From Trichoplax adhaerens (lineage: Eukaryota; Animalia; Placozoa), in contig NW_002060945.1 in assembly GCF_000150275.1 (NCBI RefSeq), positions 1,306,199 to 1,370,198 on the forward strand: DNA of 64,000 bases, in the 5' to 3' direction. Both the position numbers and the translations under genes were made by a program. The number at the start of each line of letters is the position of its first letter. Position 1 is the stretch's first letter. The notes below the pieces were generated by a model. That model was not told where the DNA came from. It saw nothing but the letters and a program-made list of their open reading frames with translations, and did no database searches. Shown here one piece after another: positions 1,342 to 31,014 of this stretch.

Positions 1342-4300
1342 ATGGAGGATCACGCACAGGTTTGATATTTGTAGAAATTTTCATGGCTTGTATCCATTAA
1401 AGTGGCCTAGAATTGCCTTTAGTAAATTGATATTCTAATATAATAATCACACTAACATTAAAGCCTATTTTAAAAGATATTTAGGCCACGTAATACTTTA
1501 AATAAAACTATTAGCACTAATCTGTTAAGAGTATTTATGCAGATAAAATGTCTATAAGAATTTAAATGCGAGTATGTAGGTAGCGATTAAAGCGAACTTA
1601 TAGCTTTTAATTTAGTTTATTTATTATAACTAATGTCTTTTAATAAAATCTATTACAACTCATAATTATTGTTATAAAATTCGGACAGCTCATTCAATCT
1701 ATTACTTTTCTAGCCATTGGATGTTGAGCCATTATGGTATATTTGGAAGGTAAGAGTTAAAGTTGATATATCATTTTAGCCATTATTATGGTATCTTCCA
1801 TAACGTGATTGGAATTTCACGAGGCTATTGAAAATATTATATGATAATATTATAGAAACTCGAAGATGCTACAAGCCAATCCCTTATTCGACAACATATT
1901 CATTCTTTAAGGTAAAAGTTTATTATGTAGTTATATCACTAAATCCGAATGTATAAAATATGACTAGTGCCGGCAAGTACATTAATTCAATCTTCTTGGT
2001 ACACAGATATTTACTCAGTTTCCCATATTAAATATAGGGAAATCATCATGCAAATGACATTCCATGTTGAATGGAAGTTAAAAGATTGCCAGCAAGGTCT
2101 TGTATCTCATCATATTATCAAGTAAGTTATTAATAGTGAAAAGAGTAAAGCATTCCAGAATGGCATTCTTGAAATTAATACTCACACACTTTATGATGTC
2201 TTATGATGATTTGAGAGTCAAGATTGCATTTTACTTAAAATAAGGCAAATGATGATATTAACAAAGATAAATAACGTAGTATATTTAAAACAAATGCACT
2301 GTTAATATTTTTTACATTACATAATAATTTGAAGATCGATGTTGCATTTGTAAGGAGAGGAGAATAATGATGATAAACAGTATAATTCGTTGGCATAGTA
2401 TTCTTTAAGTAAATGTATACCTATGCAATGTATGTTACAATTAGTGATGTGGCTTTTCCTAAAATTTAGTTACTACAATAAGGATAGTATTAGTGCCGCA
2501 GAACACCTGAATATATTAATCTAAAGATAAATATATGCGCAGATTTATAACTCATTACGATGATTTCAAGATTGATTTTCATCTTACTAGGAATAGGGCA
2601 ATTTTTAATTGTAATCAAACTATATCTCCCGTTAGTGATAGTAGTAAGAAAAATTTACAAGTGAAACCTTACTGTGATTGTAGGTAAGAAATTGGCGATG
2701 ATTCTTTCTATCGGAGGTTATAAAAGATTCTTTATTGTACTTTCTTTAATTATTATTCACTTTTGGTATATTTCTAGGGACAAAGTTATAAGCTATTTAT
2801 TTTATTTACTTGGAAACACTAACGAGTACGATAATTTATAGAATACTGATATAAAGTAAACTTTCTAGAGCATAAGCTGAATGATATTTTAAGATAACAT
2901 CTTACTGTCTTTAAATAATAAAGCTATGACTTGCAATTTGAATCCATGGATATTATTGTCATCTTACTCAACTATGATCTAACAATAAATTGCCATTACG
3001 CAGCCATAACTCCAGGTATTTATAGTATTATCTTATAACCAAGCTATTAAGCCATTTTAATTTCAAAAAGTAGTGTTACGAATATATATCAACTTATTTC
3101 ATATCTTGTGTTACAGCTGAACATGAATTACTAATCCAACTGCTTTCATCGCCATATGAAGAGATTGCTATTAAATCTATTCAGATTTTACAAGTTTATG
3201 CGAGTAAATATTTATAAAAGTACAACATTATCAAATACCCTATCCGATACCATAGTACTCACTAAAGTATATTGAATATTGTATAATAATTATTTAGCTT
3301 ATAATGTACGATGTAAATACGTTTGATTTTGTTTCTTTACTTTCTAAAACAAAAGCAATCGGCGTAATGATTTATAGTACATGATTATTTGATGAAATTA
3401 TTTTCATCCCCATTTGACTAGAAACATTTACCGTTTCAAAACGCCAATTTATACAGGAATTAGTAAAGGTTGTCAATGCTGAAAGATCGGTAAGACTATT
3501 CGAATGCTTTCGCCTTATACTGTAATTTAGTCTAGAGCAAAACTATTATTAAATTTTTTCTGCCTCGATAAACTTACTATTAAAATTATTTTGTAACAGA
3601 CTGAATTTTTGCAAGCAACGGCATCGACTTTAAACATTTGTATTCGATTATTCTATCTTGTACAAGAGAATTTTGCTGCTGTGAGAAGATTTATAGCCTG
3701 CTTAAATTACTTTATTAATCACTGAAGCATGAACAGCATTTTTCTGCATCAATTAAGAGAAAGAATAATAATTTATGCGCATATTTCTTACAGATAATGC
3801 AAATTATCGCTATTTTAATTCAGTCTGATAGCGTTAAGGTAAATTATAATTATTATCGAAAGGAGAGAAAAAGTAGAATTTTCTTATTTATTATCATTCA
3901 AAACCATTCCTAAGAAGTGTCCAAATATTAAATAGATTTTAGAAGAAATTATCGACATATTAAGACTTATTCTACGATTATCGCATTCAATCGGAGGTGA
4001 AGGCAAAGTAAGCTTACTTCTACCAGTAGCTAAATATTTGTCAATTCTTTATGGTTATAACCTAGACATATCAAATCACGCGCCTAAATTTCAATATTAA
4101 GTTTGTTATAATAATGATTCCGATTACTTCTGATCCAATGATAATATTCGACTTTTGTAGACTGTTTTTTACTCTATCATTGGAAGAATATTGGAAATCA
4201 TGTCTAGTCAATCGAAATCTCTTCAGGTCAGAATTGATTACGGTATAAATAATAATCAGACTTAATTATAAGTGTTTTCATATAAATTGAAAGTAATCTC

Positions 4301-7300
4301 GGAAATGTGGAAATAATATGAAAACTTAACTTAGAAGCTATTTACTTTGATTAAATAGCAGTTGTCATTACGTGACATAATCTTGCTGAGCCTTATCGTT
4401 ACTTTATGAAGTAATAGTTTAACTACTACCCTGACGACACTATAGAACGAAAGAATTAGTAACAAACTTAAGTTTTGAAAACAATTTATTAATTAGTTTG
4501 CACTAAATTTGAGGCTGACAGCAATATCTACCATTAGCCTATTAATGTATTATACGTTAAATTTGGGCTCTATACGTGTATAGCAAATTATAAGCTTTTA
4601 TTACCATGCTTAGTACTGCAATATATTCCCTCTCATGCATTGCAAACGTAACTTGTGTTTAGTGGACCAGCCTGGCAATATTAAAGCTAGTTTATCCATA
4701 GATCATATTTTACTTAAGCAATTCTTCATTTGATTTGTTATTTGAGCCATAATTACTGCTTTATATTATCATAGCATTTCTTAGCATGCTCATTGCACAA
4801 CTTATGATTATTTAGGAAGCAACGCTACGTCTTACCGAAGACTTAATCCGAAAAAATGATTTCGTTGGTGTTTCTAAAGTTAGTATATCGTACAATGTAT
4901 TTCATATTTGTTAGGATTGACAAAATATCATAAAATCTGCCTAACATCATTGCTTAAACAGTTAAAACTATTTATAAATTGATGTAAAAGTTATGGATAG
5001 GTGATCAAGTTATTAGCCATCTTAAGGTCATATTGCAAAATCATCAAGATTATGGCATCTACCAAATAACAGTGAGTAGTCGTGTACGAGCTTGAACCCA
5101 ACATCCTTTCCAATTGAGCTAAATAAATTGGCTATTGAATCATTTTGATAGATCGTTTTAGAAACTATCGAAAGAATGATGGACAACCATAGACCCATAA
5201 TACAAGTACTGCCAATACCAGATATGTATTTACAATTTTGTCTATTTCTAAGGGAATCTCGTCTGTTACAGGTGGTCATAGATCAGGATATTATTACGCC
5301 AATTTTAAATTGCACGAATATCGTAAGCTATTGATGTTTCCTTATCTTATTTCAATTTTATACTAACACGATAGAAGAAATAGTAAATTTGTATATGAAT
5401 GGATATTCTAAAGGATAAATCAGCTTTACAACCTATGATACAGCTCATTAGATTGCCGCTAGTTTATATCAGTTCAATGTTTAGTAATAATACTCTGAGA
5501 ATAAGATTTTAATTCCATATAAAATTCATCTAGGTAGAACATAACAAAATACTCTTATAATTCGGAATTTATAAAGTTGCTATCCGACTGCAATAGTTAT
5601 AAGAATTAAGCATCTGATGATATAAGGTTGACGATCGACAAAGATTACCAACGCACATCTGAAAGCTAAAAAATGTTCCAAACTCCTACTCAAACAGTGC
5701 ATGACTTTGAATAGTTAACAATTCAGTAAATAAATAAGGAACTAAGCGATTTTAGATATTCATCTTGTAGCATGTTAATGTGTTTTTAACTAGAATTTTT
5801 TTCATGACAACTACCTGGACGTTGTCTTTAAAGATTATATATTACTATTTTCTTGTACATTGCGTTTCTTTATTAAGATAGCTTATTTATTGTAATTCTC
5901 ATCAGAAGATGCCATTACATCCTATACATATATATAAACAGATGATTTAATAATGAATACAGAGAATAAGAAATATTCTGTGTATAATTCAATTTTAGTA
6001 TTCTGACCTACATTGGATAACCTGGAGGATCATTCTTCGTGCAGTTAAATTTAGGCCAAAAGAGCAGGTTACGAAATAAATGTATATGGCGTATTTAAAC
6101 TTAACTATTGTCATGTGATATTTTAAAATACTGTATATCACTTTAACATCAATTTCTAGGTCCAGTCATTAATGAAGCACTATAACTTGACATATCTCCT
6201 ATGTAATAAATTGCAGACGGAAAATGATTGCAAGGTAAAATTCAATGATATATGGAACTATATCTATATCTATCTTATTTACTATAATGCAAAGCATCCT
6301 GTAGAACTATTACTAAGCAAAATTTTATGATCAATTTTAAATCTACACATACTGCAATACTGTAAATGCTGATAGGGCCGAATATTCTATATTATTTGTT
6401 ACCCATAGTTAAAGAATTAATATAAAATTTAAAATATTCATATACTGTACACCAGAACTTAAATGTAAAAGTTCTAAAACTGAGGAAGTCATGCAGACAT
6501 CATTTGATAGCTTCTAAGATTTTCGTAAGGCGATACATATGAACGTCTATATATTACTGACAGCCTTACTCCTTACAGCACGGATTATCTCTTAGCGTAG
6601 TATGCTGTACTATCGTCAGCATTTTAAAATAATGCTCTACGATAATATAGCCTACAAATTAAATCTTTTAGGAATAACCTTGTATCTGGAAGCCAGAGTG
6701 TTTTCTTATAGTGTGCAATTGTTTTAATAAGAATTTGTAGCCTCGCTTTTTCTTTAGATATAATAGGCTAAAGGAAGAAACGTAGTCATACAGCAATCGA
6801 TTTTTTCAATTCATGTTCTTAGTCATTTTTATATGATATAAATATTAATTGACATATTTTTATATAATGTAGAGCTTAAAAAATGTACTAAAAACCATGT
6901 TGTCATTTACAGAAATCTTAAAGGTAAATATATTACTCATATTAGATACTCTTTTTAAATCTTGTGGAGTGTACGTGTATACTGCAATATCATCGTCTCC
7001 AAGTTGATGCTTTCAGGAAGTAAAGTGCTTAGAATATTGCAAACATAACCTTTTCTATATTTCCTTAGGGCATGCCAGATCTAACATCCAAAATGAAAAT
7101 AGATGGTAAGCTACCTTCGAGCATGTTGTAATAGCTAAATATTCTAGCAATTTGGATTTTTTATCTAATATCCAAGTTCATCATGACATTGTGTTAGTAG
7201 AGATTCAAAATGCAATCAACCTATCATGTTATAATCCGTTGATTTTTTTGGTAGTATTATCTAGGATCGATCTAATATGCAATAAATATAAAGATGATCA

Positions 7301-7373
7301 GAGATTAATACAACTTGCTCAGGAACTCCATCATTTACTAAATCGTAAAAATTCTAACTGCCGATTGATGTAG
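1342..7373 (+). CDS. Divergent importin-alpha-like armadillo-repeat protein, paralogue A (multi-exon; ends in CaaX CRLM)
   Basis: Phase-consistent GT-AG exons: 1342-1359 MEDHAQ, 1714-1749 PLDVEPLWYIWK, 1856-1911 KLEDATSQSLIRQHIHSLR, 2924-3015 YDLQFESMDII, 3117-3203 LLIQLLSSPYEEIAIKSIQILQVYA, 3600-3680 TEFLQATASTLNIC, 3794-3838 IMQIIAILIQSDSVK, 5272-5322 VVIDQDIITPILNC, 6160-6234 VQSLMKHYNLTYLLCNKL, 7255-7373 VLSRID...NCRLM*. These peptides align in order with importin-alpha ARM repeats (LQFEA, LLxSP, FLRN..VNLC, VID, FCNLL). The start codon and the exons between ~2040 and ~2780 are not fully resolved. Confidence 0.75.
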
Positions 7374-7914
7374 AAAAACAATTTGAATTTTCTCGTAAAA
7401 TACTGAGTAATTCGGTTCAATAAATGGAATAATTGTGGCATTGAATATAAATTGAAATTCACTTTTTTTAATAATTATGTAGAAATAGCGACTGATCTGT
7501 CACCCATGATTCCTGTTAAAAAATCATTTCGAAGTAATAAATGCAGAGACGTCTATTACGAGGTTTTGATAATCTTGTTTAACATCATTTGCGATCAGAT
7601 TCTAATTATTACTAATAATAACGTTAGTTATCAGTTCTCAACAGTTTATATCTCGCGTGATTTCTATATGGTGTTAGTATAGTCAACGGAAATGATGTTT
7701 CTTGCAATATTAACCGCTTAAAATTGAATTAGCTTTACTATTACTTATAGCTTACAACGGACAATAGAAACGAGCACGTATGTAAAAGGTGACCATAGAG
7801 TTATCCTAATACGCTTTAATTTGAAAAAATAAAGGAAGATTACGATTATTAAGTTGCGATATTTATAATTCTATGAATGACTGAACCTTGAATAAATAAA
7901 CTGCAACTGAGTAG

Positions 7915-8230
7915 TTATTTTAAAATGTACTTAAAATAATAAGGAAAATGAGATAATTTATTTGCCATTCAGATTCAAAAGCTAGTCGTATGATGAATTT
8001 GAAGGGTATTTTCGTGGAATAAGAATCTCTGAACTTAATACTAAACGAAATGAATGACTAAAACTTTAAATAAATAATCTATTATTGACTAATCATTTTA
8101 AAATGTACTTAAAAATAATAAAGATAAAGAGATAATCTACTCGTTATTCAGATTCAAAAGTTAGTTGTGCGACGAATTCGAAGGATATTTTCTTGGAATA
8201 AGAATATGTAAACCTAATGTTAAACTTGAA
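7915..8230. repeat. ~180-bp direct duplication
   Basis: ttttaaaatgtacttaaaataataa...gagataat...ttcagattcaaaa...gaagg.tatttt..tggaataagaat occurs twice. Confidence 0.9.
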
Positions 8231-10399
8231 ACTCACGGATAGAACCAACTAGGTTTTTCATCTTTACCTTCACGTTCATTAATATTATCGTACATAATAT
8301 ACTCATATAGTCAACCTATTAATCATTTGAAATCTTTATTTTACGTTATATTCATGCTTTACTTGATTTATAGTATAAACTATAAGCGAAATAGACTACA
8401 ATATCAGAGCTCTCATCTAGATTTCATGATTAGTTGTGATTCATTTACAAGGGCACTTTCTCTATCAATTTTTATTTCGATCGATTTCCAGACCAGTCTG
8501 AGGCCACGATAATAATTGTCTTCTTATTGCTTTGTAAAATTTTGTCAATGTAAACTTATCTCCGGTAGAAGGCATTAAATCGGTAAATTTAAGTAGAGTA
8601 GCTCAGATACCCAGTCTTTCTCAGATAGATTAAGTAGCTCGTATTAGCGGTAACTGTTTTGACTAGCCATATGTATTAATGAACATTTTTACTTAAATGG
8701 CTCTTTAACTAAAATCAACTACATCATTAGTGAAATTGAACCGCGGTGATCAAAAATCTAATAAGCTTGTTGATACCGATTCAGAGTATGCCCGGTATAG
8801 GGTTCTAAATTGTTGTTACTCTACAAGTTGAAATAAACTATTTATGGATATTTAATCTTTTACAGAATCACCCTAGTATATTAATGCTTTTCCATGCTGA
8901 TTCTCATTAACTGTAAGTGTTAGTAAAGATTTTTACCAGACCGATTCTTTATTAAATCAATTACCCCATTATTGAAACTAAAAGCTGAAATTAAATCACG
9001 ATGACGACTAATTCAGCAATCCTCTTCGATTACATGTTCCTATACATGACAGATACTCGACAAGCGCTTTTATATGATCGATATATAAATATAAAAATAC
9101 TAATTTTATGTATTTCAATCTCTTCCTGTAAGATTAGTCCGGTAGGTTAATACTTTCTCATGTAGAATTTACAGCTAACTAGAAGCCATGATGAAGATAT
9201 TAACTCGGCAATTTCTTAATTGAAATAAATTACATCATTACCCAATTATTAATAAAACGGAAATTAAATCATGATAAAATAAGTAATCCAATAATCTTGT
9301 TAATTACTTATTCAAATACACGATCTATATGCGTTTTTAAGCGATTATTGTCTATAAATCTAAAGAAATTGGTGTAGTGTTCAGTTCAACACTTTCTTTT
9401 GTAGAATTTATAGCTACTTGTACATATTTGATTGTAATAATTTCTTGGTTCGTGCTTAATACAAACTACGTTGATTCCTTATTTGTATACAATTTTGAAA
9501 AGTTATTGCAAAACTGTTTCAAAGTTCAACATTCATTCTAGATCCTACTTATCCCATATTTATATATAGAGAGTGCGCGCGTTTTATATGCCTTTCCTAG
9601 GATATGTTATTGGATCTTATCAACATGAACTCATGCAAGATGAATGAACTAAAAGTTATTTGTGCTTTTTCGATATCATTGTCAAAATGATCAGTAGAAC
9701 AATGATTCCAACATAACTAGACTATCATAGAAGTAACTTGATCGGTTATGGCGTTATTCAATCGATTACAAGGGTTTTGTCGTTCGAAATAGGACAATAT
9801 TAGCCGCGCATTGAAAAAATAACCCGAAGTACTTGACAACTAACATTAGTCATTATAACAATACTTTCAAAGTATTGCCATCTAACTTATTATTACCGAC
9901 GATAAAAGGCGTTGACATAATTGGACATCAATTGTTGGCTTACTTTACAACTATTGTCTAAAATGAAGGAAAAGCAAGAAAGATCATGGTGATAGCTATA
10001 TTGTCAACAAGAAGTCGTGTTGCGACAAAGCAAATAATCGTAACTTGGTTTTGTATTCATCCTAGACGACCTCCAAGATGCATTGATCATTTGTTTTAGA
10101 ATATCAACAAAGATATTCAACTCTATTCCATTTATTTCTTATCATAAAATCGTGCACTTCGTTTTTAACACTAGCCAGTAAGCCTAGGTAGGAAACTTGG
10201 ATACATCATTTGGGCTTGCTTCCACGATCCATCAACATTAATCCAAAATTACAACTATGGCGTTTATTAGCAATTATACTCAGGTTCGAATCATTTCTAT
10301 CTTTCTTGAAAACTTATTTCGATTTTTATATGCTTTGATAAGACAAGTTCTACCATTCATTTATTCACTCCTTACACAATTCAAACATTGACAATTTAT

Positions 10400-13569: not shown

Positions 13570-16500
13570 ATGTTTTTGAGAGGAAATAATGTAATTTACT
13601 AAATCTAATTACACATGCGATATATCATACGTTGTCATAGAGAGTTTAAAACGAGTATTCGTTTCCTTTTTGTAACTCGAATTATTTTCTGTTATTTAAA
13701 CTCCATCAATTTTATTGTAATGACAGTAAACAGAGATTTTCCAATCCATTTATAGGCCTATCCACGTCAGCTTTCAATGGAATTTCAGGTAGAAAACGAA
13801 CAAATATTTTGCTCAGAATTACTTTCTCGAATCCATGAAGCTTTCGATAATTAGATTTTTAGATAAATTTATGACAGATGAACAACAAATTTCTTTGTTA
13901 ACCTTGAAATTGATTCGCGATCGTAGACTCTACAATCGGCAAATAATGGCGATAATATTTTACGGATTCTTCAAAAACTGCGGTAATTTCTGAAGCATCC
14001 ATGTTGATTTCTTTTACTCTTCAACTTACATAACATATTTATAAAAATACAGGAATACAGCAGACCGTTTCCTTCCTAAACCAATCTGGTCTCAAGGGCG
14101 AAATTTGGATAGCCCTCTTTCTCTTCAAATTATGGAGTAAGTTGCCCATAACCATGATTGCCTCAACATGTCCAGTACACTAAGCGCATCTTAATCAGAA
14201 AGTACTTCAGAAAGTATTTTCTATGTCTTTGTTAATTTATCTGATCTCTACTAATTTGGTTCTTACTTTTATTGCAGTGAAAGAGCAAAACCTATCGAGA
14301 TTTGTTTACCTTTGCAACAGTATGTATTTTCTTCTAAAAAGACCGATAGAATCATAACTCAGATTATGTTAGCAATTGACTAATCCATATGTTTCTATAA
14401 ATAATTTCATAGGCCAATCATTAGAAGACTGTTCAGCCTCTTAAAAAATTATGATTGGTTTGTGTACTTGTATAGGCGCTTGTGGATTCATTTCAATAGC
14501 CTAACTATCTTCTGATAATAATATTCTGTTTTCCATTGGGCTATAGTTATGATTTACGTCTAGAAATTATGGATATCTTACAACGTGTAATCAGTTATGA
14601 TATTTATACATGCTACGTCAATAGCTCCATCGACAGCCATAATGAAGGTACAAATAATGTTTCATCCAGCATGATTGATTTATCTACTTTACATCATCTT
14701 TGCCGATTTTCATATTATAATTACAAATAACTTAACTTATCCAACGTGATTAATTTATCTACTTTATATCGTCTTCATTAGTTACTAATTTATAGATATA
14801 AATAAGATCTTTTATTCAGCATGATTGATTTATCCATTCTACATTATCTAGATCAATTTCCATACTATAGTTATAAATAGCTTATTCTTTCTAGCATGAT
14901 TGATTTATCCACTTTGCATCATCTTGGCCAGTCGCCATATTATAGTTCATTCTAATGAAATCTTTCATTACTATTTCACGACTACTCGAGATCTAATCTC
15001 GAAAATGACTGATTCCCAGGATTGACCGTAACAATTATACTGATCTTGTAGAGCAGATCTAATTGCAACAATAAGCACAGCTAGGCACAACACGATGGAG
15101 GTTTATCTGTCGTTATGCTGTCTCATTTCGTATTCCTTTAGTTATACTTCCATATTGACATTGGTCAACAAAGATTCGCTTGTAATCAATGATTGAATAG
15201 AAATGGTTGTCAAGATATTTACGGTTTTACATGATCTATTTGTAATAGAATGTACCTAGCTCCATAATTTGACAAACAGACAAAGCAAATATGGAATGGC
15301 CATCATTTGTCTTTAACGCCTCAGGCAATCTTCGTGGTATACGTCTGTGTTAGTTCTTAATGATAATCTATCTCAATGGATAGTATGGATATAGTCTAGC
15401 CACGATGCTAAGCAACAATGATTATTGGGTTCTATCTGAAGAAAGATTCATTGATACATTTTCATGCTGTGATTAATCAAGTAGATGAAGAAGTTGTTAA
15501 TGACTCTTAACGTTGACACAGACCTTTAGTTGTAAGCTTAAAATCAATCTAAACATGATATTCTCGTAAATAAGCCACCGGTAACGTCATAGCAAAATCG
15601 ATAGACGTATGAAACTAATAGTTTATGATAGCTTGTCACAATCTTCACTTGTGGCAAAGATTTATAAAGACTCTAGAGTAGGTACGATAACTCAGCTACT
15701 TCTCCAGCATTTCCAGTCTCCATGAAAGCGATATTGTAATGATTTCAGCTAATTACAGTAGTGGTATGTTAGGAGTACAGTGATAGTATGCAGTATAGAA
15801 CTGTATATCTTAATAAATGTCAAGAACCCATACACTACAGATATACGAGTATAAGAGAACTCGATTTTTAGACTAATGAATTGATACACTTTTCTTCGCG
15901 TTATGACTCCTGCACACTTTTTTAGCAATTGTCACTTTTATTCTGCAAACTACTCGCGCTTAAATGAATCTTTATAGTGCAACTTTGAGTGTTAATTTGC
16001 TCCTGACTTTTAATTCCTATGGAAATTATTGTAGATAAAGTACGACTACTACTCCATTTCTTGTCATTACCATATGAAGATCTAGCTATTAAATCTATGC
16101 AGCTGCTGTCCGTTTATGCGGGTAAGTTGATTCAGTTGGATCAAAATTTTGTTTTCATCATCCTTAAGACAACTTATATTTCAGTCTCTGTAGTACCTAA
16201 ACTACAGTGGTAAACTATCACATTAATAATGGGAATAAAAGCTGAAAGGAATATTCTTACTAATTAGATTTAAAACTCATTCAAAATCGAGAGCTAAACT
16301 TTGTTAAAATGTTAGCTAAAGCCATTACCCTTGAAAAATCGGTAAGTTCTATTGTGTTATTTTAAATTAAACTAAACTTTTAATCTCGTTAATCATTTAA
16401 TTTTGCCGTAATTTCATTAACAAAAGGTGGAATTTATGCATGCAGCGGCAACTGTTGTTAACATTTGCTTTAAAGATACTTTATTATCTCAGCATGACCA

Positions 16501-18978
16501 TTTAGAAGATGTAAGAAGGCGTCAAATATTGCTAAATCACTCTTAAAAAATTGCTTTCTGCGCTATAATACTCATTTCAGGTCCAACTAATGTTCAGATT
16601 CTGAGTTTAATTTTTATTTTACAGCTGGCTGCGATTGCTTGTGTTCTACTTCAATCTAATGATGTTGCAGTAAGTATTATTATTATTTAGCGAAACATAG
16701 GCACGTATATTGGAATCCTTAAAAATTCCAACCTATAAATTAGGCCTTAAGTATTATACTATCCTGATCGCAGATTTCCGGTGAGATGATTTCATTGTTG
16801 GTGCAAGTATCTTCAGAAACGACATCTAGTAATGGGGTTAGTTAAAGCTATATCATTGCTGAAATTGGGATAGATGATTATTTAGATATTTTAAAATTGG
16901 TTATATATATTGAGTTTGGTAATGGTATTAAAAGTCAATCTTCTATTTGGAATTAGGCGTATATCAAAAAGTTATTTAACCTGATACCTATTGGCAACAT
17001 TTTTGAAGTTCTAGCGGTGGGATCAATTCATCTAAGTGTAGGTTTAATTTTATTATGATATTAAACCGAAGAATAGAACTGGTTTTTAACTAGTGACTAT
17101 CTTTTTCAATTAACTGTCTTAATACAATTTCATTTACATCTAGATATCCGTTGCATCTATGGTCTTCAATATTATTACTTCAAATTCTATTTCTCACTCT
17201 TCTCAGGTACTGAACATTGATTTATTTCTAGATGCAATCTGACTAAAATTTTTTCACTCCTAGTAATGATGGATAAAATTGTATCCTGATCCATCAGATG
17301 TAGTTTGCAGTTTGTACGCTATTTAAGCAATATTATTTTATATACATCATGATGGGATTAAACTTAGTCTGATTACGTTTAATAATATTTTAACCAATAA
17401 ATAATTAAGCAACACTAGCTCATCTTTTTATACCATTACGATTTCATAGTTTCATTTTGGTCGAAAAACGTTAATATACTTGAAAAAAATGTTGAAAAAG
17501 CCTTCCAATTATACTGAATCCCAATTAAAGGTATGTACATTACAGTATGAAAATTGTATTAAGAACTTTGATTAGCGTGAGATACTGAGTGAGAATTTCA
17601 AAGTAATATTATTGTTACGATTATTTTTTAATTCAATAAAATCTACAAAATTATTTCCTATAATGTTTGATACTTTCTTTTTAGAAATTAATTTGGGAAA
17701 TCGGCTGGTTTGCCAAAGCTGATCATGCTTTAGTTCAGGTAATTTGCATCCCTGTATTTAAAATTAATCCCATACATGTATACGTTTGTTAAAACCAATG
17801 CTACCCTGTACTCATTTCAATGGCTATCAAACAACTAATAAATTTCTGTTTAATTTATTTATTCAGGTTATTATCGACGAGGATATTTTGTCAACCGTCC
17901 TTCTATGTGCTGAACAGGCAAGTTTAATTCAAGGATTGATACATTAGGTAGCCCAAATCTTCGAACTTGATTTTTCATCTATTTCTACTACCAGTTTCCT
18001 TACTTGTATGGCAGCATTATTGTACAAACGATTTTCTTTGTCATTGGCTCTGGGAATGAACATCAGGTTAATATCTTGTTTCTGATACTTTAAAAATATT
18101 ACAAAAATTGAGCACTAAGACTTTTTTATATATTGAAAAATCTGAATAGATAAAAGTCTTGATTCCAAGTTGCAATTTAACCCAGTGTTTATGTTCCATA
18201 TTATTACATAAGAATGTTCTTTACGTAAGTTACTACATAAATCAAATCAAATATTATACTGATATTGTGGTGTCATCATCAGTATGATTTATACACTGTT
18301 AATTCCGTACAGATCTAAAATTACCTTACCTACTGTATAATATTAAAATCTTATGTACATAACTATTAGGATATTGTCCGAGTTGTAGAAGTATTATGGA
18401 CAATTTTAAACAAATGCCAGGTACTGTTAATCCTTAACTTTACTGACAAATTTTATAATTAATTTCATATTTTAATATCGCTTATCGATATTGATGTGAT
18501 GGAAATATGAAGGTAATATTAAAATGTATCATACTGTAATTGAATTTTTACGTCAGGAAATACCTGGATTATTGGAATGCAATAATAGCAAAGGTAGGTG
18601 TTTAAGTTTTAACTGATAGAAGTCTATTCATTTTATTGGATAGAGAATGTCTTTTAAAAAGCCCAATAATATGTTTAATTTAGCAATGTTATTGATCATC
18701 TGTATTTAGAACTGATGAAAATGGAAATCATATGCGATTCAATTGTTCGTAATCCAATTGTGCCGAGAGAGTATGAAGGTAAGCCTTTGGTTTTCATGGT
18801 AAACTCAATTTAATTGCGATATATTTGTTTCATTGCAGCTATAAGCTTAATTGGGGAACTAATAATTCAATAAATTCAAGTAATGACTCATAACGTTTTC
18901 TATTTTAATTTTTTCCATATAGATTGCGCAAAAAAACTTGGACGATTCATAAAATACAATGCTATTGCTCAACATTAA
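13570..18978 (+). CDS. Divergent importin-alpha-like armadillo-repeat protein, paralogue B (multi-exon)
   Basis: Exons homologous in size and phase to paralogue A: 13927-13982 (56 nt, TLQSANNGDNILRILQKLR), 14547-14647 YDLRLEIMDIL, 16035-16121 (87 nt, LLLHFLSLPYEDLAIKSMQLLSVYA), 16427-16510 VEFMHAAATVVNIC, 16625-16669 (45 nt), 17685-17738 KLIWEIGWF, 17867-17917 VIIDEDILSTVLLCAEQ, 17995-18066 (72 nt), last exon 18923-18978 ...KYNAIAQH*. The ATG at 13570 is tentative. Confidence 0.7.
14665..14950. repeat. ~75-bp degenerate tandem repeat x4 in an intron of paralogue B
   Basis: Recurrent (ca)tgatt(g/a)atttatc(t/c)actt..atcatct. Confidence 0.85.
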
Positions 18979-22199: not shown

Positions 22200-23000
22200 T
22201 CGGGAAGGAACTTGAACAGAAGGTTCTTATCAGGATATAATTTCGCTTTATCATGCACAGAATATGGAGTAATGCGAAACACCCTATTCTCTCCATACTG
22301 CGGAAGGGGCAATGAATACAAACTGATGCCTCTAGCGATCAATCAATTCCGAGATCAATTCCAGCATTATTAACAGGATAATATGCATAGATCATTAAGT
22401 TCATAGGGAAAGAACTTAGGCAGAAGGTTGTCATCAGTGTATAATTTCGCTTATAATAGATGAATATAGTTTACAGAATATGGAGTAATATGGTATGCCC
22501 TATTCTCTCTATATCGTAGAAGAGTAATAAATACAAATTGATGCCTCGAGCAATCAATCAACTATAGGATAAATTGCAGTACAATCAATAGAATAATATA
22601 CGGATTGGCCGGTCATTCCCGGGATTGGCCGGTCATTCCCGGGATTGGCCGGTCATTCCCGGGATTGGCCGGTCATTCCCGGGATTGGCCGGTCATTCCC
22701 GGGATTGGCCGGTCTTTCCCGGGATTGGCCGGTCATTCCCTGGAATGGCCGATTCCCGGTGTTAGGATTGATTGTAGCATATCATATTCGTACAATTCAT
22801 AGGCATGGCGCTTGGACACAAAGTTATCATCACGGTATAATTTCACTTTCGATGAACAGAATATGAAGTAATACATTATACCCTATTTTCCCCATATTGC
22901 AGAATGGTCATGAATACAAAGTTATACCTCTAGTATAAACCAATTCTAGGAGAAAGTCCTGCATAATCAATAGAATGATACACGTAAATTATTCATTTCC
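22200..23000. repeat. Three degenerate ~200-bp tandem units, the second followed by or interrupted by the 20-bp minisatellite
   Basis: The shared core tataatttc..cagaatatg(g/a)agtaat..ccctatt..aatacaaa..cctc occurs at ~22235, ~22440 and ~22835. Confidence 0.85.
22602..22760. repeat. GC-rich 20-bp minisatellite (gggattggccggtcattccc), ~7-8 copies
   Basis: Near-perfect tandem copies are directly visible; the unit is 16/20 self-complementary. Confidence 0.97.
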
Positions 23001-24099: not shown

Positions 24100-25180
24100 C
24101 TTCATATCTAATGTGTAGGATTATAGTTAAGTGGAGAAGTACATATTAATTCTTCTTCCCTTCTTACACAATCTATCACGTTTGCAACAGTAATGGCATC
24201 GATTTTAATTTAGTTAAACTAATCTTAAATGTTACCGTACAATCTTCCTCATTCTATAATGGAAGATGATTCATTCCTAATTTTACAAAGACAAAGATAA
24301 ATCCTTCCAATTTTATTTTATCCATCACGATCAAATCGTCGAATTGCCGCAAGCTGTAAATTTTGATGTTGATTTTTGTCTCACATCCAAGCATTTTACC
24401 ATCAGTTGCAAACAATATTGAAAACTTAGATCAAATTTTTCCCATCATATAAGAGTAAATGATTATTAGTAAAACTTTACAACACTACAGTTCAATTATT
24501 TTAATTGTTCTTTATCTGGCGTATTGAGATAGTTTGGAGATAGAAATTCGGATAAATAAAGAATCTTTGTGTGTATCTGACGAAGATTAGCATGTTAATT
24601 ACAGTAACAGCATCAAATCCACTTTACTTAAACCGATATCGAATATTGATATCAAGCTATTCCTATTAAAAATTAGTAGAAGACTTGTTTCCAAGGTGCT
24701 AAAATGCTACAGTTAAATCATCTTGCTTTTATTGTGCCCATACTATAATTTGATTATGGTGAATTAAACGAGTTTATATTGATTCTTTTTTCGTCTCTTA
24801 TATACACCATTACGCCAACAACAGCAAAGGTATCGATTTTAATACAACCGAGCCTCGGTAGAAATTTATATCCAATCCTTCTTGTTTTACAATTAGAGAT
24901 GAATGACTTAAAGGTCTTACAACACCAAAACTACCTAAAAATTTCGAACGAACATTCCAAGTGGAACATAGCATTCTCTTGAAATCAATTGGCTTATAAA
25001 CTCAATAATTTCAGTAAAAGATAAGTCGAAAGGAGATGATTTCAATTTAAAAGGAATAATTACTCCATAATAGTCTTCAATAATTGATATCTTGCATGCA
25101 AGTATGTTGTAGTGGATAATGACTATAATCACTTTCTATCGCTCAGCCAGTTTGTTAAAGAATATTAAATTCATTTTGGT
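24100..25180 (-). pseudogene. Decayed NACHT NTPase relic
   Basis: Motif remnants occur in the correct order across frameshifts and stops: YGVIIPFKLK (VxxxxLR strand), VVLVL*DL (Walker B LILDGLDE-like), SVVLKSIP (TSRP sensor-like), INSF (IxGF-like), QHQNLQLAA (HxxxQExxAA-like). Confidence 0.4.
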
Positions 25181-26292
25181 TACTTAAATTTAAACGGAAT
25201 TTAGATTTTACTGTCGATGACGTTAGTCGAACTCATTTATTCGAAACTACAAATCATAAGTGATTAGCAGGCGCTTGTGTATTCGAATTAGAGCAAACCT
25301 AATTCAATATTATAGTTATTTTGACAGTGTCCTAACCTCTTGTTCAAAATGATGGTATTCGCTCAATACCTTAATTAAATGGCGAAATTGACATTATCAT
25401 CAATGACTACAGTTTACGGATAGTTTCCGGTTAAGTTTTCGCGGAAGTATCAGAATTTTTAGGCAGTCGTTGACATTTATTAATCAACTCAACTAAAAGT
25501 AAAGCCTTGCCACACAGATGGAGCTTTACTATACTCTCAGTACTTTAATAAGTAGCATTTAAACATCACTTTCAAACTTGCTTGAGATTAAAACTAATTA
25601 AATGCTTGCTCGTAGCTAGAGAAGTCAAATTACAATTATTAGGTCCAGCTAAAAATATTTGCCCAAACTTTTATTTGCATATTTTATGATGTCGAAAGGC
25701 ATTAAGCTACAATTAAGATATTGAACGCTTCTGTTTTGAACGGAAAACATCGCATAATCTTCGTGTACCATTGCTATCTTTCGAGTGCTAAGGCTGATAT
25801 AAGTAGCAAGATTACTTCATATTTAAATATAGCTTTTAAAATTAAATCACTTCATTACCGTGAATAATATCGATATAATAGTGCTTGAGTATCTATCTAG
25901 TTGCTCATACGTATAGTGGAGGAGTAATCGTTACCCATACTCCTAATCTACGAGAATTAAGACTTTAAAATCAAGATCGTTAATAATAATGTAAATTTCT
26001 AAATTTTGATGCAATAATCAGTTGCATTACTCATACGCATAAGTAACGATGTTTAAATACTTTAAGGCATGCATTATGCAAGAACTAATATAAATATTAA
26101 TGGTAAAGTAAGCTTTACTAGTTTGATCATTTATGCAGTTGTTCGTCATGTATTTTAACTCAGATATTTGTGATTGTGGCTACGCAGTTTATAATCGAAT
26201 TAAACAAAATTTAAAGCTATAATCTATCGTTATGCAAAAATACTTATTTATTCTAATCAAAATATTTTCACGGCTGCAATTCTCATCTACAG

Positions 26293-29200
26293 ATACTAAA
26301 TATTAATACACTATGGCAGGAATTAGAGGTAAGAACGATTTAATAATGACAAATCACTATTATCAACTCATCCTATTTTTATATTGATTAGTTGCTTGTC
26401 TTAATCTTACATTTGCAAAATTTGATAGTCTTATAATCCAGCAAATCTTCAACCTGTAATGTTGGCATATGTGGAAAATCTTGGGTAATTTCATGTCTTG
26501 TTATATCTTGCTATAAGTACTACACTATCTAGCTATCTAAGATATTGACAGAAGCAAAATTTAAGCAACTGTATTTTAACAAACAGTATCCTATTAATTA
26601 TGAACTTGTTATGTCTTTAAACACTTCTTAACGTAAATAAATATATTTTAAACTCAAGGAGGATTGTTTCGGAACTGATCTCAGTGGCAATTGATAATAG
26701 CCTAGCTACCTATTGCCATTCCTTAGTAATGGAAGATGTCGTTAGGTTTGCTCTAAGAATCTAACTTCATGTAATGTTTCAACCATAACTACAAGTGAAC
26801 TGAGACAATTGATATATCTGGAGATTCAGTGATAAGTAAATAGCTTTAAATATTTCGTTTGATTATTTTAGTCAAGTAGATCACGACAGCCAGCACGATC
26901 CATTCTTCCTTGTCCGGTAATCATATAGGACATCTGCATATTAATATCGACTTTTTAGTAATTCTTCGGCAATATTTATTGCTACATACGTATTACTTCT
27001 AGTGATCGATTACTGGCTAAACTTATTTCTATTTTGGAAAATTTCGAAGAGTAAGTCAATCCATACTAAATTATTATAAAAATTGGCTGTAATGTATACT
27101 ATCTGAACAATTCATTGACACAAACAAACTGTACTCATTCTCGTTGCGGCTTTCAGTTTCGAATTGCAGATGGAAACTACAAAAGTTATAATCACGTTTA
27201 TCGATTATTACCATGGATATGTGGTCTTTCAATGTCCAAATATTGAATCAGGTAATCGTTTTTAAAATAAAATCGACAAAGTTAATTTTTTAAATATAAA
27301 AACCATACGTCTATATTTCAATGTGAGCTGATGATCTCACATTTATAGTTTACGTTGTTATAAATATGACTGATTGTATTTGCAGTAAGATTTTATGCTA
27401 GAGTCACAATAATAAGTATGGCTAGTGCTAAAAATTCTAATGGAATTGTAATATTTGGTGATGGTTATCTAATGGAATTGTAATATTTGGTGATGGTTAT
27501 CTAATGGAATTGTAATATTTGGTGATGGTTATCGGTACCCTAACCTTGTAACGTAGTTTAAATATGTTTTATTTTAGACGATATGAGAACTCTCATTTCG
27601 CTTATCTCATCTCCATATGAAGAAATAGCCTTAAAATCGATGAAGATTATCCAGACATATAACACTACAAAAACCTATACAGGTTTAAATGCAAATAAAC
27701 TTTTTTAATATCATTAGAATGAAATTATAACTTTCTCAAAGGATACCAGCTAAACTAGAAGTCTTCTTACCATTAATGCGTTGATTTACCAATTAGCCTC
27801 TTATCGCGTGCCATGTTTACATCTAGGAGAGCATCTAGTTCTAAAATGTGGTTTAATGCGAGAATTAGCCAAAGTAGCTACTATCAGTAAATCGGTAAGC
27901 TATAGCTAAATATATTATATGCGTATTATCTTTGGTTATTATACCCGCGAAAGTATCATTTAGCAAAATTAATGAGTTAAGTCTACTTTTTATATTTATA
28001 TTTTTAGACTGCGTTCCTTCAAAGCGTTGCTGCAACCATTAATACTTTGGATTGGACAGTCTTTCGTAGCTTTAAGGATTACCATGCTGACGTAAGATAT
28101 CTCAATTTTTTGTATTCTCTTAGTAAATTCACTTTATATAGTACATGTACCAATGTTTCATAATCCATGGGATAATAAGATTATGATAATTTTATCACTA
28201 TAGCTTGGGATCACTATTTCTATTCTAATGCAATCCAACAATATACAGGTTATTATTTCACTACTTAGAATATTCTATTTTTTCCCCGTATACTCTATTG
28301 TGTGTATTTATACTACAGAAATATATCCATGGCAATGTATTTACTACGGAAAACGCTATTAAAGTAATGATTTAATCTAACAAGCTTATGATAATTGATT
28401 CATTTAGGTCCTACGAATGACAATTAAAGCACTGACTAAAATGACAAAATTTGATTCACAACATGTTAGGGTATGTTGATAACAATTTTCTTGCTGAATC
28501 TTGTATACATATATGTACATGATCATTTCCTTAACTTTGATGCTATGTTTTATATCTGTCACATATAAATGTTGCTTACTCCTATGTTCGCCTTGGATTA
28601 ATATCACTGCATCAAATATTTGCCATCATTAATTTTCCTATTTGATTACATTATCTATAATAGGAAGTTTTTCAGTCCTTGCCAGTGACGTTAGAAGTTC
28701 TAAAAAGCGAATCACCGCGTTTATTTGTAAGAAAAGTGTGAAACGCACGATAGTATCCCTCAAAATCGGATATGACTAACTATATATTTACATTATTTTG
28801 TTAGGATATTACCGTAAAACTACTAGAACTCATTGCAAGAAGAGTTCGATTTCGTTCACAAACGAAGGTGATTAAATAGATTTAAGACTGTTACAGGGTC
28901 AGAGATAATTCTCTGCTGGCTAATATGATAGTGATAGTGAAATTATAAATACATACTAAATTAATGTGTGTTTGATACAAGTATTAATATTAGTCTTAAT
29001 TTACAAACATAATGACTACTGATACATTAATTTTATAATTGTATAAAAATGGCTGCTATTTTATCGTATTTACAGTTATTAATTGGTTCCAAAATCATAA
29101 TTTACCTGAAAACAATGCTACAGAATCCAGGCTTTTGCAATATATCACAATTTCGAGTAAGAATCAAAATACCAATTTGCATTATTATTATCTTTAATAT

Positions 29201-31014
29201 AGAAATAAATATTCCTAAGCTGTCTTTCAATTGGATGGATTACTTATTAATACAATGATCCGTATTGTTTAGGTACTTTTTAAGGTGCTAGATGATTTTT
29301 CCGCAACAAATGATGCCCTATTACAAGTAAGAATGATGTGATAGTACAATATTTAATTGGATGGATATATTTGCATTTTCATAAACTGTATCTTATATTA
29401 ATTAGACTATCATACAAAGATATATATTCAGTCTATTATAATACCTACAGAACATATCAATTTTAAGTTTTTCTAAACTACCAATTTCAAATTATTATTT
29501 GGTACGGCACTTTAATTTAGCTTCTATAAAAGCAGTCAATTTATTCAATTTATATTATAGTAGCTCTGATTTAGTATGTCCTAATGAACAACTTCAAAAT
29601 TTTTGTGGAGCATAGTCCTAGTATTTAGGTTGAATTATAAATACCACTACTAGAACTTAAACGATGCTATAGATATTAACGTCTTATTGAATTCTTACGC
29701 TATAATAAAATTTAGGCCGCTAGGGATTCTGTTTCAAGATTTAAAATCAGTTTACTAAATTAGAATTTAAGCTATATTGTAACAGCTATATTCCGCATAG
29801 CTTCTCTATTAAATTCACTTAGTTAGAATAATCAGCTGTTTATTTTCAAGTATAGTCTATATTGAAATTTCTTTACCTGCTTCAAGAATTTGACTGAAAT
29901 TTATATGATTCACATTTAATATACTTTGCATATATCAATTATATCCCAAAAATACGCTTGTGATTAATTTACTATAAATTTCAGTGCCGTTTAATATATG
30001 ATAATATTCATTTCGTGATCCATTTACAATAATAGAAGCTCATTAGCGATTCTGAAACTTTAACTACAATTCTATCCTGCGCCGAACAAGTAAGATATTT
30101 TTTATTAGTATTGCTAAATTGGCACAGTACGTATTTTAAGCAATATATGTATCCTGATTTACTATAATTATAGGACTTCATCTATTTTCGAACAACGGCT
30201 TGGAGTATTGTATTTCGAATTATAACAACTGCCACCTCAGAACAAGTAATAAATTAGTATTAGATCATCAATGCATGTTTATTACTGTTTTCATAATCCA
30301 CATTATTTATCTAAACGGTTTCTGTATTGAATATCTTGACAGATCCAATATTTGCTAGATCAATCTAATCTGAAATATTATCTTTGTAACCAATTACTAA
30401 ATACAGCTAGCATTGAGGTAAATCATTTCACACTCCTATCCAAATAATCATTTAATCTACTTCTGTACATATATAGTTTCAATAAATATGACGTTATTGA
30501 CAAGCATATGAAAGAAAGTAGTTAAATTGATAAATCAAAAGCATATATCAATAATATAACTAAAAATTACTGCTATTAGAATCTTCGCAAAACCCTAAAT
30601 GCTATGGCTACAATAGCTACCAAGTGCAAGGTAGCATTAATATTTATATCATTTCCTTTATTACCTAATAAAATCCCCATGGTTATGAAATACGTTAATT
30701 ATTTACTTTTTATATATCGATTTAACAGCGATTTCCAAGCTTGTCCGATGATATGAAAGCAACTGGTAATTATAACTTGTAAAACTTATTGATTCAATAT
30801 TAAATGCTTACTTAAGCTTATTGCTCGATTTTGATTTAATTTCAACTTTCTCGGACATATTATTTCATCTATTCGATTAGTAATATCTAGAATTGACGCT
30901 ATATACAAGGAAAACCGCGATATTAATTCTATATCTGAACCAGCTCAGAAATTACGACGTCTCATGAAAACGAAAAAGGTTAAAAAATTCGATATCGGAT
31001 GTACAATAACTTAA
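26293..31014 (+). CDS. Divergent importin-alpha-like armadillo-repeat protein, paralogue C (multi-exon; polybasic tail plus CaaX CTIT)
   Basis: Exons: 26293-26328 ILNINTLWQELE, 26429-26484 (56 nt), ~27157-27251 FELQMETTKVII, ~27578-27682 LISLISSPYEEIALKSMKII, 27827-27894 HLVLKCGLMREL, 28008-28091 TAFLQSVAATIN, 28204-28248 (45 nt), 30174-30245 (72 nt, DFIYFRTTAWSIVFRIITTATSEQ), 30343-30417 IQYLLDQSNLKYYLCNQL, 30881-31014 VISRID...KTKKVKKFDIGCTIT*. The start codon lies upstream, possibly the ATG at ~26100 directly before a GT donor. Confidence 0.75.
27436..27533. repeat. Perfect 32-bp tandem repeat x3 in an intron of paralogue C
   Basis: tctaatggaattgtaatatttggtgatggtta is repeated three times. 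Confidence 0.97.

What the first reader, a model, noticed from the sequence alone, without database searches (positions are those of the whole stretch)
1342..31014. Tandem cluster of three repurposed importin-alpha paralogues without an IBB domain
Three ~20-exon genes share exon sizes and phases (56-, 87-, 45- and 72-nt class exons) and align repeat by repeat with importin-alpha. From memory, 56/87/45/72-nt exons also occur in vertebrate KPNA3/KPNA4; this needs checking. The paralogues are very divergent from each other and from canonical importin-alpha. In all three, the reading frame seems to begin only a few residues before ARM1, with no Arg/Lys-rich importin-beta-binding (IBB) domain. Canonical importin-alphas are highly conserved, so an apparently intact, fast-evolving, IBB-less triplet suggests a lineage-specific ARM scaffold family that no longer works as a nuclear import adaptor.
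Basis: partly seen in the sequence, partly recalled or inferred. Interest (0 to 1): 0.8.

Follow-up and report, generated by a model that had tools for sequence, protein, structure and literature searches.

The report
IBB-less importin-alpha-derived gene family, Trichoplax
Three neighbouring genes of the placozoan Trichoplax are intact, conserved descendants of a nuclear-import adaptor gene (importin-alpha 3 type) that have lost the importin-beta-binding exons and most cargo-binding residues, so they probably do something other than classical nuclear import.

Summary
The window is Trichoplax adhaerens scaffold C1412. It carries three same-strand paralogues of 22, 23 and 22 small exons: A 1342-7373 (no T. 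adhaerens protein found), B 13570-18978 (TRIADDRAFT_54155) and C 26100-31014 (TRIADDRAFT_54156). Exon order, sizes and phases match, including 56-, 87-, 45- and 72-nt exons.

No Pfam family reaches its cut-off. A family profile nevertheless hits importin alpha-3 in the PDB at E 7.7e-10, and importin-alphas are the only significant natural hits. 13-14 of the 18 introns of Trichoplax's own alpha3-type importin gene recur at the same alignment column and phase (17 within 6 columns). Only 2 of 7 recur for the alpha1-type gene.

The family lacks the three IBB exons and the acidic last exon. It has replaced most of the Trp/Asn NLS ladder.

Two corrections:
- The genes are not evolving fast now. dN/dS is about 0.11 against a divergent placozoan orthologue.
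- The family has at least 8 loci, six of them within about 93 kb.

IBB-less importin-alpha duplicates are already known in Drosophila and rice, so this is a new, very divergent variant. Its function is inferred, not shown.

The parts
1342..7373 (+). Gene A, 22 exons, 466 aa, stop TAG at 7371-7373. No T. adhaerens protein for it turned up in the searches run. The Trichoplax sp. H2 assembly has a called gene of 495 aa over this span.
   Evidence: Exons: 1342-1359, 1714-1749, 1856-1911, 2038-2121, 2636-2683, 2778-2825, 2924-3015, 3117-3203, 3422-3489, 3600-3680, 3794-3838, 3936-4007, 4161-4226, 4816-4878, 4991-5071, 5152-5205, 5272-5322, 5999-6067, 6160-6234, 6873-6923, 7069-7105, 7255-7370. The frame is open. 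A family HMM built without gene A scores it 246.9 bits, E 2e-77, over residues 60-460. Exons 1-5 are the least certain, because the HMM does not cover residues 1-59. The H2 gene call spans this region.
13570..18978 (+). Gene B = TRIADDRAFT_54155 (P0002), orthologue TrispH2_002537 (P0010). 23 exons and 467 aa in my merged model.
   Evidence: Exons: 13570-13590, 13756-13788, 13927-13982, 14053-14136, 14278-14319, 14413-14457, 14547-14647, 16035-16121, 16268-16341, 16427-16510, 16625-16669, 16774-16836, 16957-17016, 17144-17206, 17450-17530, 17685-17738, 17867-17917, 17995-18066, 18150-18224, 18370-18420, 18557-18593, 18710-18778, 18923-18975.
17867..17917 (+). Conserved 51-nt exon of gene B with a GC (GCAAGT) donor. 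Both public gene models omit it.
   Evidence: It is in frame and paralogous to A 5272-5322 and C 30036-30089. It is the same size as the 51-nt exon of the alpha3-type importin gene.
26100..31014 (+). Gene C = TRIADDRAFT_54156 (P0001, a truncated model), orthologue TrispH2_002538 (P0011). 22 exons, 472-482 aa.
   Evidence: Exons: 26100-26102 (ATG), 26293-26328, 26429-26484, 26659-26745, 26872-26916, 27003-27050, 27157-27251, 27578-27682, 27827-27894 (annotated acceptor at 27797), 28008-28091, 28204-28248, 28408-28470, 28664-28726, 28805-28867, 29076-29156, 29273-29326, 30036-30089, 30174-30245, 30343-30417, 30580-30630, 30729-30765, 30881-31011. Against contig L022 from a divergent placozoan, eight of eight compared exons keep their AG/GT sites, and dN/dS is 0.11.
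3117..3203 (+). The most conserved exon of the family (87 nt, phase 1-1; ARM3 helix region), gene A copy. The B copy is 16035-16121 and the C copy is 27578-27682.
   Evidence: 52% identity among the three copies, with 9 invariant residues. A profile search of 1.84 billion proteins found only 7 hits, all Trichoplax proteins or short contigs encoding near-copies of these exons.
28204..28248 (+). 45-nt exon of gene C. The T. adhaerens model P0001 skips it; the H2 model includes it.
   Evidence: It is conserved in A (3794-3838), in B (16625-16669), in L022 with its splice sites, and as a 45-nt phase 0-0 exon in the alpha3-type importin gene.
26091..26093 (+). In-frame stop in T. adhaerens within the 5' extension of the H2 gene C model.
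   Evidence: codon 15 of the mapped H2 model is a stop here. The next ATG (26100-26102) is taken as the start.

Best explanation
Window 1342-31014 holds three intact members of a gene family found only in placozoan sequences. The family has at least 8 loci in this genome, six of them within about 93 kb of this scaffold.

Origin: the family arose by DNA-level duplication of an intron-rich importin-alpha gene of the alpha3 (KPNA3/4) type. The genes keep the whole ARM1-ARM10 superhelix and nearly all of the parental intron positions.

What is missing or changed:
- The three exons that encode the importin-beta-binding (IBB) domain are absent; a short first exon takes their place.
- The last exon, which encodes the acidic tail, is absent.
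- Most of the Trp/Asn residues that grip classical NLS peptides are replaced.

The genes are under purifying selection.

Inferred mechanism, not shown: the proteins act as importin-beta-independent ARM scaffolds. With no IBB they would have no autoinhibition and no coupling to the Ran/importin-beta cycle. They would bind non-classical ligands along a remodelled groove. A and C end in CaaX-like boxes and might be lipid-anchored.
For: Organism and names.

Homology:
- The family profile A2 against PDB sequences gives importin alpha-3 at E 7.7e-10 in one stretch (query 73-368). All other significant natural hits are importin-alphas. The next family, symplekin, is at E 0.07.
- A family HMM scores the alpha3-type Trichoplax gene at 35.7 bits and the alpha1-type gene at 23.0 bits.

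Gene structure:
- The alpha3-type gene (G000:C1410, L019 minus strand) has exons of 42, 56, 48, 48, 86, 170, 87, 45, 132, 57, 72, 54, 51, 72, 84, 42, 58, 89 and 93 nt.
- In an intron-blind MAFFT alignment, 13-14 of its 18 introns fall in the same column and phase as family introns. 15 fall within 2 columns and 17 within 6.
- The alpha1-type gene shares only 2 of 7. The subtype of each canonical gene was checked.

Fold: the AF2 model of P0011, residues 11-486, aligns with importin alpha-3 residues 72-486 (Z 20.4, 384 residues aligned).

No IBB:
- The six-frame Pfam IBB scan hits only C1410.
- No IBB at E up to 10 in P0001, P0002, P0005, P0006, P0008, P0010 or P0011.
- Upstream regions match the canonical IBB exons no better than the opposite strand does.
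- Family exon 2 aligns with the first post-IBB exon of the parent gene.

Constraint:
- dN 0.11, dS 1.03, omega 0.11 over 168 codons, with splice sites conserved.
- Between H1 and H2, coding sequence diverges 0.46% against 0.77% for introns, with 12 synonymous and 5 nonsynonymous changes and no indels.

NLS ladder: in A, B and C, Trp is kept at one of the six Trp positions and Asn at 1-2 of the six Asn positions, out of seven W/R-x-x-x-N/Y ladder sites. Both canonical genes keep all of them.
Against: - No Pfam family reaches its cut-off. Arm scores 13.5 bits against 20.6. Arm_3 scores 16.6 against 28.8, and on an ARM3 exon rather than ARM10.
- Structural Z-scores for other ARM proteins (plakophilin, Vac8, axonemal ARM proteins) tie with those for importin-alpha. 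Fold alone therefore does not discriminate.
- The AF2 models are of only moderate confidence (pLDDT 67-69), and the N-terminal ~90 residues are poorly modelled.
- No transcript data were available here.
- Gene A's first five exons are uncertain. My model has 466 aa, while the H2 gene call has 495 aa.
- Loss of the import function is inferred from residues aligned at under 20% identity.
- IBB-less importin-alphas can still support transport in yeast and Drosophila, according to PMC8645118.
Confidence: 0.8

Rival explanations
1. The proteins are still nuclear import adaptors. They would carry specialised cargo without importin-beta, as proposed for the IBB-less Drosophila alphaKap4/5/6 and alphaKap2 duplicates.
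For: PMC8645118 states that IBB-less importin-alphas function in transport in yeast and Drosophila. The whole ARM1-ARM10 scaffold is retained. Selection is purifying.
Against: Most of the Trp/Asn ladder of both NLS sites is replaced. The acidic C-terminal exon is missing. Two members end in CaaX-like boxes, which would point to membranes rather than to shuttling.
Confidence: 0.15
2. They are a generic ARM-repeat family unrelated to importin-alpha, and the similarity is repeat-level convergence.
For: No Pfam family reaches its cut-off. Many ARM proteins tie in structural Z.
Against: 13-14 exact and 17 near coincidences of intron position and phase with the alpha3-type importin gene, against 2 of 7 for the alpha1-type gene. 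The significant natural PDB hits of the profile are importin-alphas only.
Confidence: 0.03
3. They are decaying duplicates (pseudogenes) or gene-prediction artefacts.
For: The public models disagree with each other. P0001 is truncated, and both B models skip a conserved exon. The 5' extension of the H2 gene C model carries a stop in T. adhaerens.
Against: All three frames are open across 22-23 exons. Omega is 0.11 with conserved splice sites in a divergent placozoan. Coding sequence is less diverged than introns, with a 12:5 synonymous excess between H1 and H2.
Confidence: 0.02

Closest known systems
Importin subunit alpha-3/alpha-4 type (KPNA4/KPNA3). The Trichoplax copy lies at G000:C1410:5916-5921 kb, minus strand.
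   Same: Ten-ARM superhelix. It is the best natural sequence-profile hit. The exon order is collinear, and 17 of 18 intron positions and phases are shared or nearly shared, including the 56-, 87-, 45-, 54-, 51- and 72-nt exons.
   Different: The family has no IBB exons and no acidic C-terminal exon. It has three extra introns. Identity is 17-19%. The Trp/Asn NLS ladder is mostly lost. Pfam Arm, Arm_3 and IBB are not detected at their cut-offs.
IBB-less importin-alpha duplicates of Drosophila (alphaKap4, alphaKap5, alphaKap6, alphaKap2A-H; PMC8645118)
   Same: Lineage-specific importin-alpha duplicates that keep the ARM repeats and lack the N-terminal IBB. Some derive from importin alpha-3.
   Different: The Drosophila genes are retrogenes or partly processed copies with 0-1 parental introns. 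The placozoan genes keep nearly all introns, which indicates DNA duplication. They are far more divergent and form a tandem family of at least 8.
Rice importin alpha2 and alpha4 (PMC12227655)
   Same: Importin-alpha family members without an IBB, with non-nuclear (plasma membrane or plasmodesmata) localisation reported.
   Different: The origin is independent, in plants. Rice alpha4 is about 50% identical to canonical alpha1, whereas the placozoan proteins are below 20% identical to their canonical counterparts.
Designed armadillo repeat proteins (dArmRP), PDB 4d49 and 5mfd
   Same: Top sequence-profile hit (E 2.7e-12) and top Foldseek hits, showing regular ARM repeats.
   Different: These are synthetic consensus proteins. 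The match reflects ARM regularity, not kinship.

Membership tests
Importin-alpha (karyopherin alpha) family | N-terminal importin-beta-binding (IBB) domain, Pfam PF01749 | tested here: not met
   There is no IBB hit at E up to 10 in seven database models. The six-frame scan of the genome hits only the two canonical genes. Upstream DNA matches IBB exons no better than the control strand. Family exon 2 aligns with the first post-IBB exon.
Importin-alpha (karyopherin alpha) family | Ten tandem ARM repeats forming the cargo-binding superhelix | tested here: met
   AF2 model residues 11-486 align with importin alpha-3 residues 72-486 (Z 20.4). The profile alignment runs as one stretch across ARM3-ARM9. 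Pfam Arm itself stays below its cut-off.
Importin-alpha (karyopherin alpha) family | Trp/Asn (W-x-x-x-N) ladder of the major and minor NLS sites | tested here: not met
   each of A, B and C keeps one of the six Trp positions and 1-2 of the six Asn positions. Both canonical Trichoplax genes keep all of them.
Importin-alpha (karyopherin alpha) family | C-terminal acidic tail exon after ARM10 | tested here: not met
   The family genes stop within the exon homologous to the ARM10 exon. The last canonical exon (93 nt) has no counterpart.
Importin-alpha (karyopherin alpha) family | Common descent, shown by shared intron positions and phases with a bona fide importin-alpha gene | tested here: met
   13-14 of 18 introns are exact matches, 15 fall within 2 columns and 17 within 6. 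The figure is 2 of 7 for the alpha1-type gene.
Pfam Arm (PF00514) / Arm_3 (PF16186) | Score above the curated gathering threshold | tested here: not met
   Arm scores 13.5-13.6 bits against 20.6. Arm_3 scores 16.6 against 28.8, on one exon only. There are no Arm hits inside the window in the six-frame scan.
IBB-less importin-alpha duplicates (Drosophila alphaKap4-6 type) | ARM domain retained and IBB absent in a lineage-specific duplicate | tested here: met
.
IBB-less importin-alpha duplicates (Drosophila alphaKap4-6 type) | Origin by retroposition (introns lost) | tested here: not met
   The genes have 21-22 introns, most of them at parental positions.
Prenylated (CaaX) proteins | C-terminal Cys-a-a-X that is actually lipidated | not testable with these tools
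   A ends in CRLM. C ends in CTIT after a Lys-rich stretch. B, P0005 and P0006 have no such Cys. No orthologous C-terminal exon from another placozoan was available to test conservation.

The most novel reading that the evidence does not exclude
A placozoan-specific radiation turned a nuclear-import adaptor into a set of importin-beta-independent ARM receptors, two of them membrane-anchored by prenylation. They would capture lineage-specific ligands at the cell cortex or on endomembranes. That would be a new cellular role for the importin-alpha fold in an early-branching animal.
Probability: 0.15. Interest if true: 0.65.

Novelty: new variant of a known kind. Interest (0 to 1): 0.5.

Why it matters
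These genes are filed as uncharacterised proteins with no domain. Here they are tied to importin alpha-3 by sequence profile, fold and, most tellingly, intron architecture.

They show how a highly conserved transport adaptor can be stripped of its regulatory exons and its cargo-binding residues, multiplied to at least 8 copies, and then held under purifying selection in one of the simplest animals. This gives a natural series for asking what an importin-alpha scaffold can do outside the Ran/importin-beta cycle. It also parallels the independent IBB-less duplicates of Drosophila and rice.

Practical points: two public gene models need repair, and the case shows that intron mapping can rescue homology that Pfam misses.

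Tried and rejected
- Stringent tblastn of window ORFs against the window found only the 87-nt exon as paralogous. Relaxed searches were swamped by AT-rich noise until hits were chained.
- Exon-by-exon Pfam scans gave nothing except one weak Arm_3 hit. It turned out to lie on the ARM3 exon, not on ARM10.
- phmmer of the single protein P0006 against PDB sequences gave only E of about 2. The five-sequence profile was needed.
- Two of my own scripts failed: an exact spliced mapper on P0002 and a seed-based mapper. A DP aligner replaced them.
- A Lys/Arg-density scan for IBB remnants missed its own positive control. It was replaced by direct alignment of the canonical IBB exons with an opposite-strand control.
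- The metagenome scan for further orthologues found none.
- No paper mentions the locus tags, or Trichoplax importin-alpha together with IBB.
I redid that step with coordinates only.
- H1 versus H2 is too close (99.3% identity) for a per-gene dN/dS, so only pooled counts are given.
- Considered and rejected: beta-catenin-type or other ARM ancestry, pseudogenes, and an IBB hidden upstream.
Full report
**Source and setting.** The window is G000:C1412:1306199-1370198 of a 105.6-Mb, 1414-contig, roughly 30% G+C assembly. Exact matches to NCBI proteins identify it as Trichoplax adhaerens, which agrees with earlier notes on this genome. It is not human.

**Observation.** A strict self-comparison of translated ORFs found one clearly paralogous exon at 3117-3203, 16035-16121 and 27578-27682. 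Chaining of weak hits and interval-restricted alignments then revealed about a dozen collinear anchors among three + strand loci.

A profile of the 87-nt exon was searched against 1.84 billion representative proteins and returned only 7 hits. Among them:
- P0001 is TRIADDRAFT_54156, which is gene C.
- P0002 is TRIADDRAFT_54155, which is gene B.
- P0005 and P0006 are two further T. adhaerens proteins on the same scaffold.
- The rest are short ORFs from Logan and ENA contigs.

Word searches added the Trichoplax sp. H2 orthologues P0008, P0010 and P0011.

**Gene models.**
- I mapped the database proteins onto the window with a spliced DP aligner. This gave 21-22 exons for B and C, with canonical splice sites.
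- Gene A was modelled by searching for phase-compatible AG..GT exons that resemble the B and C exons, then curated by hand. No T. adhaerens protein for gene A turned up in my searches, but the H2 assembly has a 495-aa gene call over the same span.
- B has a conserved 51-nt exon (17867-17917) with a GCAAGT donor that both public models skip.
- The T. adhaerens model of C is truncated and skips the conserved 45-nt exon 28204-28248.
- The 5' extension of the H2 model of C carries a stop codon in T. adhaerens at 26091-26093, so I start C at the next ATG, 26100.
- The conserved acceptor of C exon 9 is 27827, not the annotated 27797.
- All three joined frames are open, at 466, 467 and 482 aa.
- A family HMM built without gene A scores my A model at 246.9 bits over residues 60-460. 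The first five A exons are therefore the least certain.

Joined models were built and aligned only inside local scripts. External searches used exons by reference or database proteins.

**What the family is.**
- Pfam finds nothing at its curated cut-offs in seven family proteins. The best is Arm at 13.5 bits against a cut-off of 20.6. The six-frame Arm scan of the genome has no hit inside the window.
- A five-sequence family profile searched against all PDB sequences is decisive. Designed armadillo proteins score E 2.7e-12. Importin alpha-3 scores E 7.7e-10 in a single stretch (profile positions 73-368). Every other significant natural hit is an importin-alpha, and the next family (symplekin) is at E 0.07.
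- Foldseek and VIA-align on an AF2 model of P0006 (pLDDT 69) give an ARM superhelix. Yeast Kap60 is top at Z 20.3, but many ARM proteins lie at Z 17-20.
- The AF2 model of full-length P0011 (pLDDT 67) superposes residues 11-486 on residues 72-486 of human importin alpha-3. That is the whole delta-IBB ARM domain.
- Language-model look-alikes include importin-alpha and ARM clusters. This is a lead only.

**Gene-structure test.** The genome has two IBB-bearing importin-alpha genes, both on C1410.
- One has few, large exons, and its best PDB matches are alpha-7, alpha-1 and alpha-5.
- The other has many small exons, and its best natural match is alpha-3.

I defined the exons of both genes from conserved cores, splice sites and phase compatibility. 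From the first post-IBB exon onward, the alpha3-type gene has exons of 42, 56, 48, 48, 86, 170, 87, 45, 132, 57, 72, 54, 51, 72, 84, 42, 58, 89 and 93 nt.

I then aligned the proteins with MAFFT, which knows nothing of introns, and marked the intron positions.
- 13-14 of the 18 introns of the alpha3-type gene fall in the same column and phase as introns of A, B and C. 15 fall within 2 columns and 17 within 6.
- The alpha1-type gene shares only 2 of its 7 introns.
- With about 21 family introns spread over roughly 480 columns and 3 phases, I estimate that fewer than one exact coincidence is expected by chance.
- The family has three extra introns.
- Its exon 2 aligns with the first exon after the IBB. 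The three IBB exons are replaced by a short first exon.
- It ends inside the ARM10 exon and has no counterpart of the last, acidic exon.

This is what a DNA-level duplication of an alpha3-type importin gene with loss of its terminal exons would produce. The same size classes do occur in the Trichoplax alpha3-type gene.

**IBB.**
- The six-frame IBB scan finds only the C1410 genes.
- No family protein has an IBB hit at E up to 10.
- Aligning the canonical IBB exons to the upstream regions and first introns of A, B and C gives scores no higher than on the opposite strand. An earlier Lys/Arg-density scan failed its positive control and was dropped.

**Selection.**
- Contig L022 (Logan SRR30664516) carries an orthologue of gene C from a divergent placozoan. 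Only the exons align.
- All eight compared exons keep their AG/GT sites. Over 168 codons, dN = 0.11, dS = 1.03 and omega = 0.11.
- T. adhaerens and Trichoplax sp. H2 are 99.3% identical across the region. Coding positions differ at 0.46%, introns at 0.77% and intergenic DNA at 0.70%. The coding differences are 12 synonymous and 5 nonsynonymous, with no indels.
- The paralogues are therefore old and divergent, at 25-29% identity to each other and 17-19% to canonical importins. They are not evolving fast now.

**Family size.** A profile search of the genome finds family exons at the following places:
- C1412 at 1244-1247 kb (P0005);
- C1412 at 1254 kb;
- C1412 at 1298-1301 kb (P0006);
- genes A, B and C;
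- C1410 at 5032 kb;
- C1290.

That makes at least eight loci. No relative outside Trichoplax-like sequences was found.

**Function (inferred).**
- Seven H3 ladder positions (W/R-x-x-x-N/Y) are fully conserved in both canonical Trichoplax genes. A, B and C each keep Trp at one of the six Trp positions and Asn at 1-2 of the six Asn positions.
- Without an IBB there can be no importin-beta coupling or autoinhibition. The acidic tail exon is also absent.
- I therefore favour importin-beta-independent ARM scaffolds with new ligands.
- A ends in CRLM, and C ends in CTIT after a Lys-rich stretch. B, P0005 and P0006 have no such Cys. Any prenylation would be member-specific and is untested.

**Known parallels.** IBB-less importin-alpha duplicates are documented in Drosophila, where they are retrogenes and at least one is testis-enriched (PMC8645118). 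They are also documented in rice, where they are non-nuclear (PMC12227655). No paper mentions these Trichoplax loci.

**Verdict.** This is a new, unusually divergent, intron-retaining variant of a known kind. Its biochemical role is open.

Noticed in passing
window 27436-27533: A perfect 32-nt tandem repeat (3.1 copies) lies in the intron between C exons 7 and 8. The truncated T. adhaerens model P0001 places its start codon just upstream of the array, and its first exon (27418-27463) runs into it. The H1/H2 alignment breaks inside it (27469-27500), presumably through a copy-number difference.
   Followed up: partly
window 22602-22751: A 20-nt tandem repeat, 7.5 copies, 96% matches. It also reads as an inverted repeat in translated comparisons. 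It lies in the spacer between genes B and C.
   Followed up: no
window 49852-50206 and 42511-42708: Tandem repeats of 93 nt (3.8 copies) and 92 nt (2.2 copies), at 95-96% identity. The first is open in one frame (99-aa ORF at 49922-50221).
   Followed up: no
window 33804-34130 (- strand): A 108-aa ORF that by eye resembles the C-terminal lobe of a protein kinase. It is presumably an exon of a minus-strand kinase gene.
   Followed up: no
window 7357-7370 and 30970-31011: Gene A ends in CRLM. Gene C ends in a Lys-rich stretch followed by CTIT. These are CaaX-like tails that B, P0005 and P0006 do not share. The same tail is present in the H2 orthologue of C.
   Followed up: partly
G000:C1412:1375943-1377507 (5.7 kb beyond the window end; L015): Pfam Arm hits just downstream of the window. 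They fit the beta-catenin gene that earlier notes place there. An unrelated ARM gene therefore lies next to the cluster.
   Followed up: no
L017:17136-21991 (Trichoplax sp. H2, NOWV01000018.1): A 396-aa gene with no Pfam hit lies between the P0006 orthologue and the giant LRR receptor gene. I did not check whether it is another family member.
   Followed up: no
L023/L024 (ENA metagenome scaffolds) versus window 14547-16121: In another placozoan-like contig, the intron between gene B exons 7 and 8 is only about 150 nt, against 1.4 kb in T. adhaerens. The T. adhaerens intron contains 75/150-nt tandem repeats (14660-14947).
   Followed up: no
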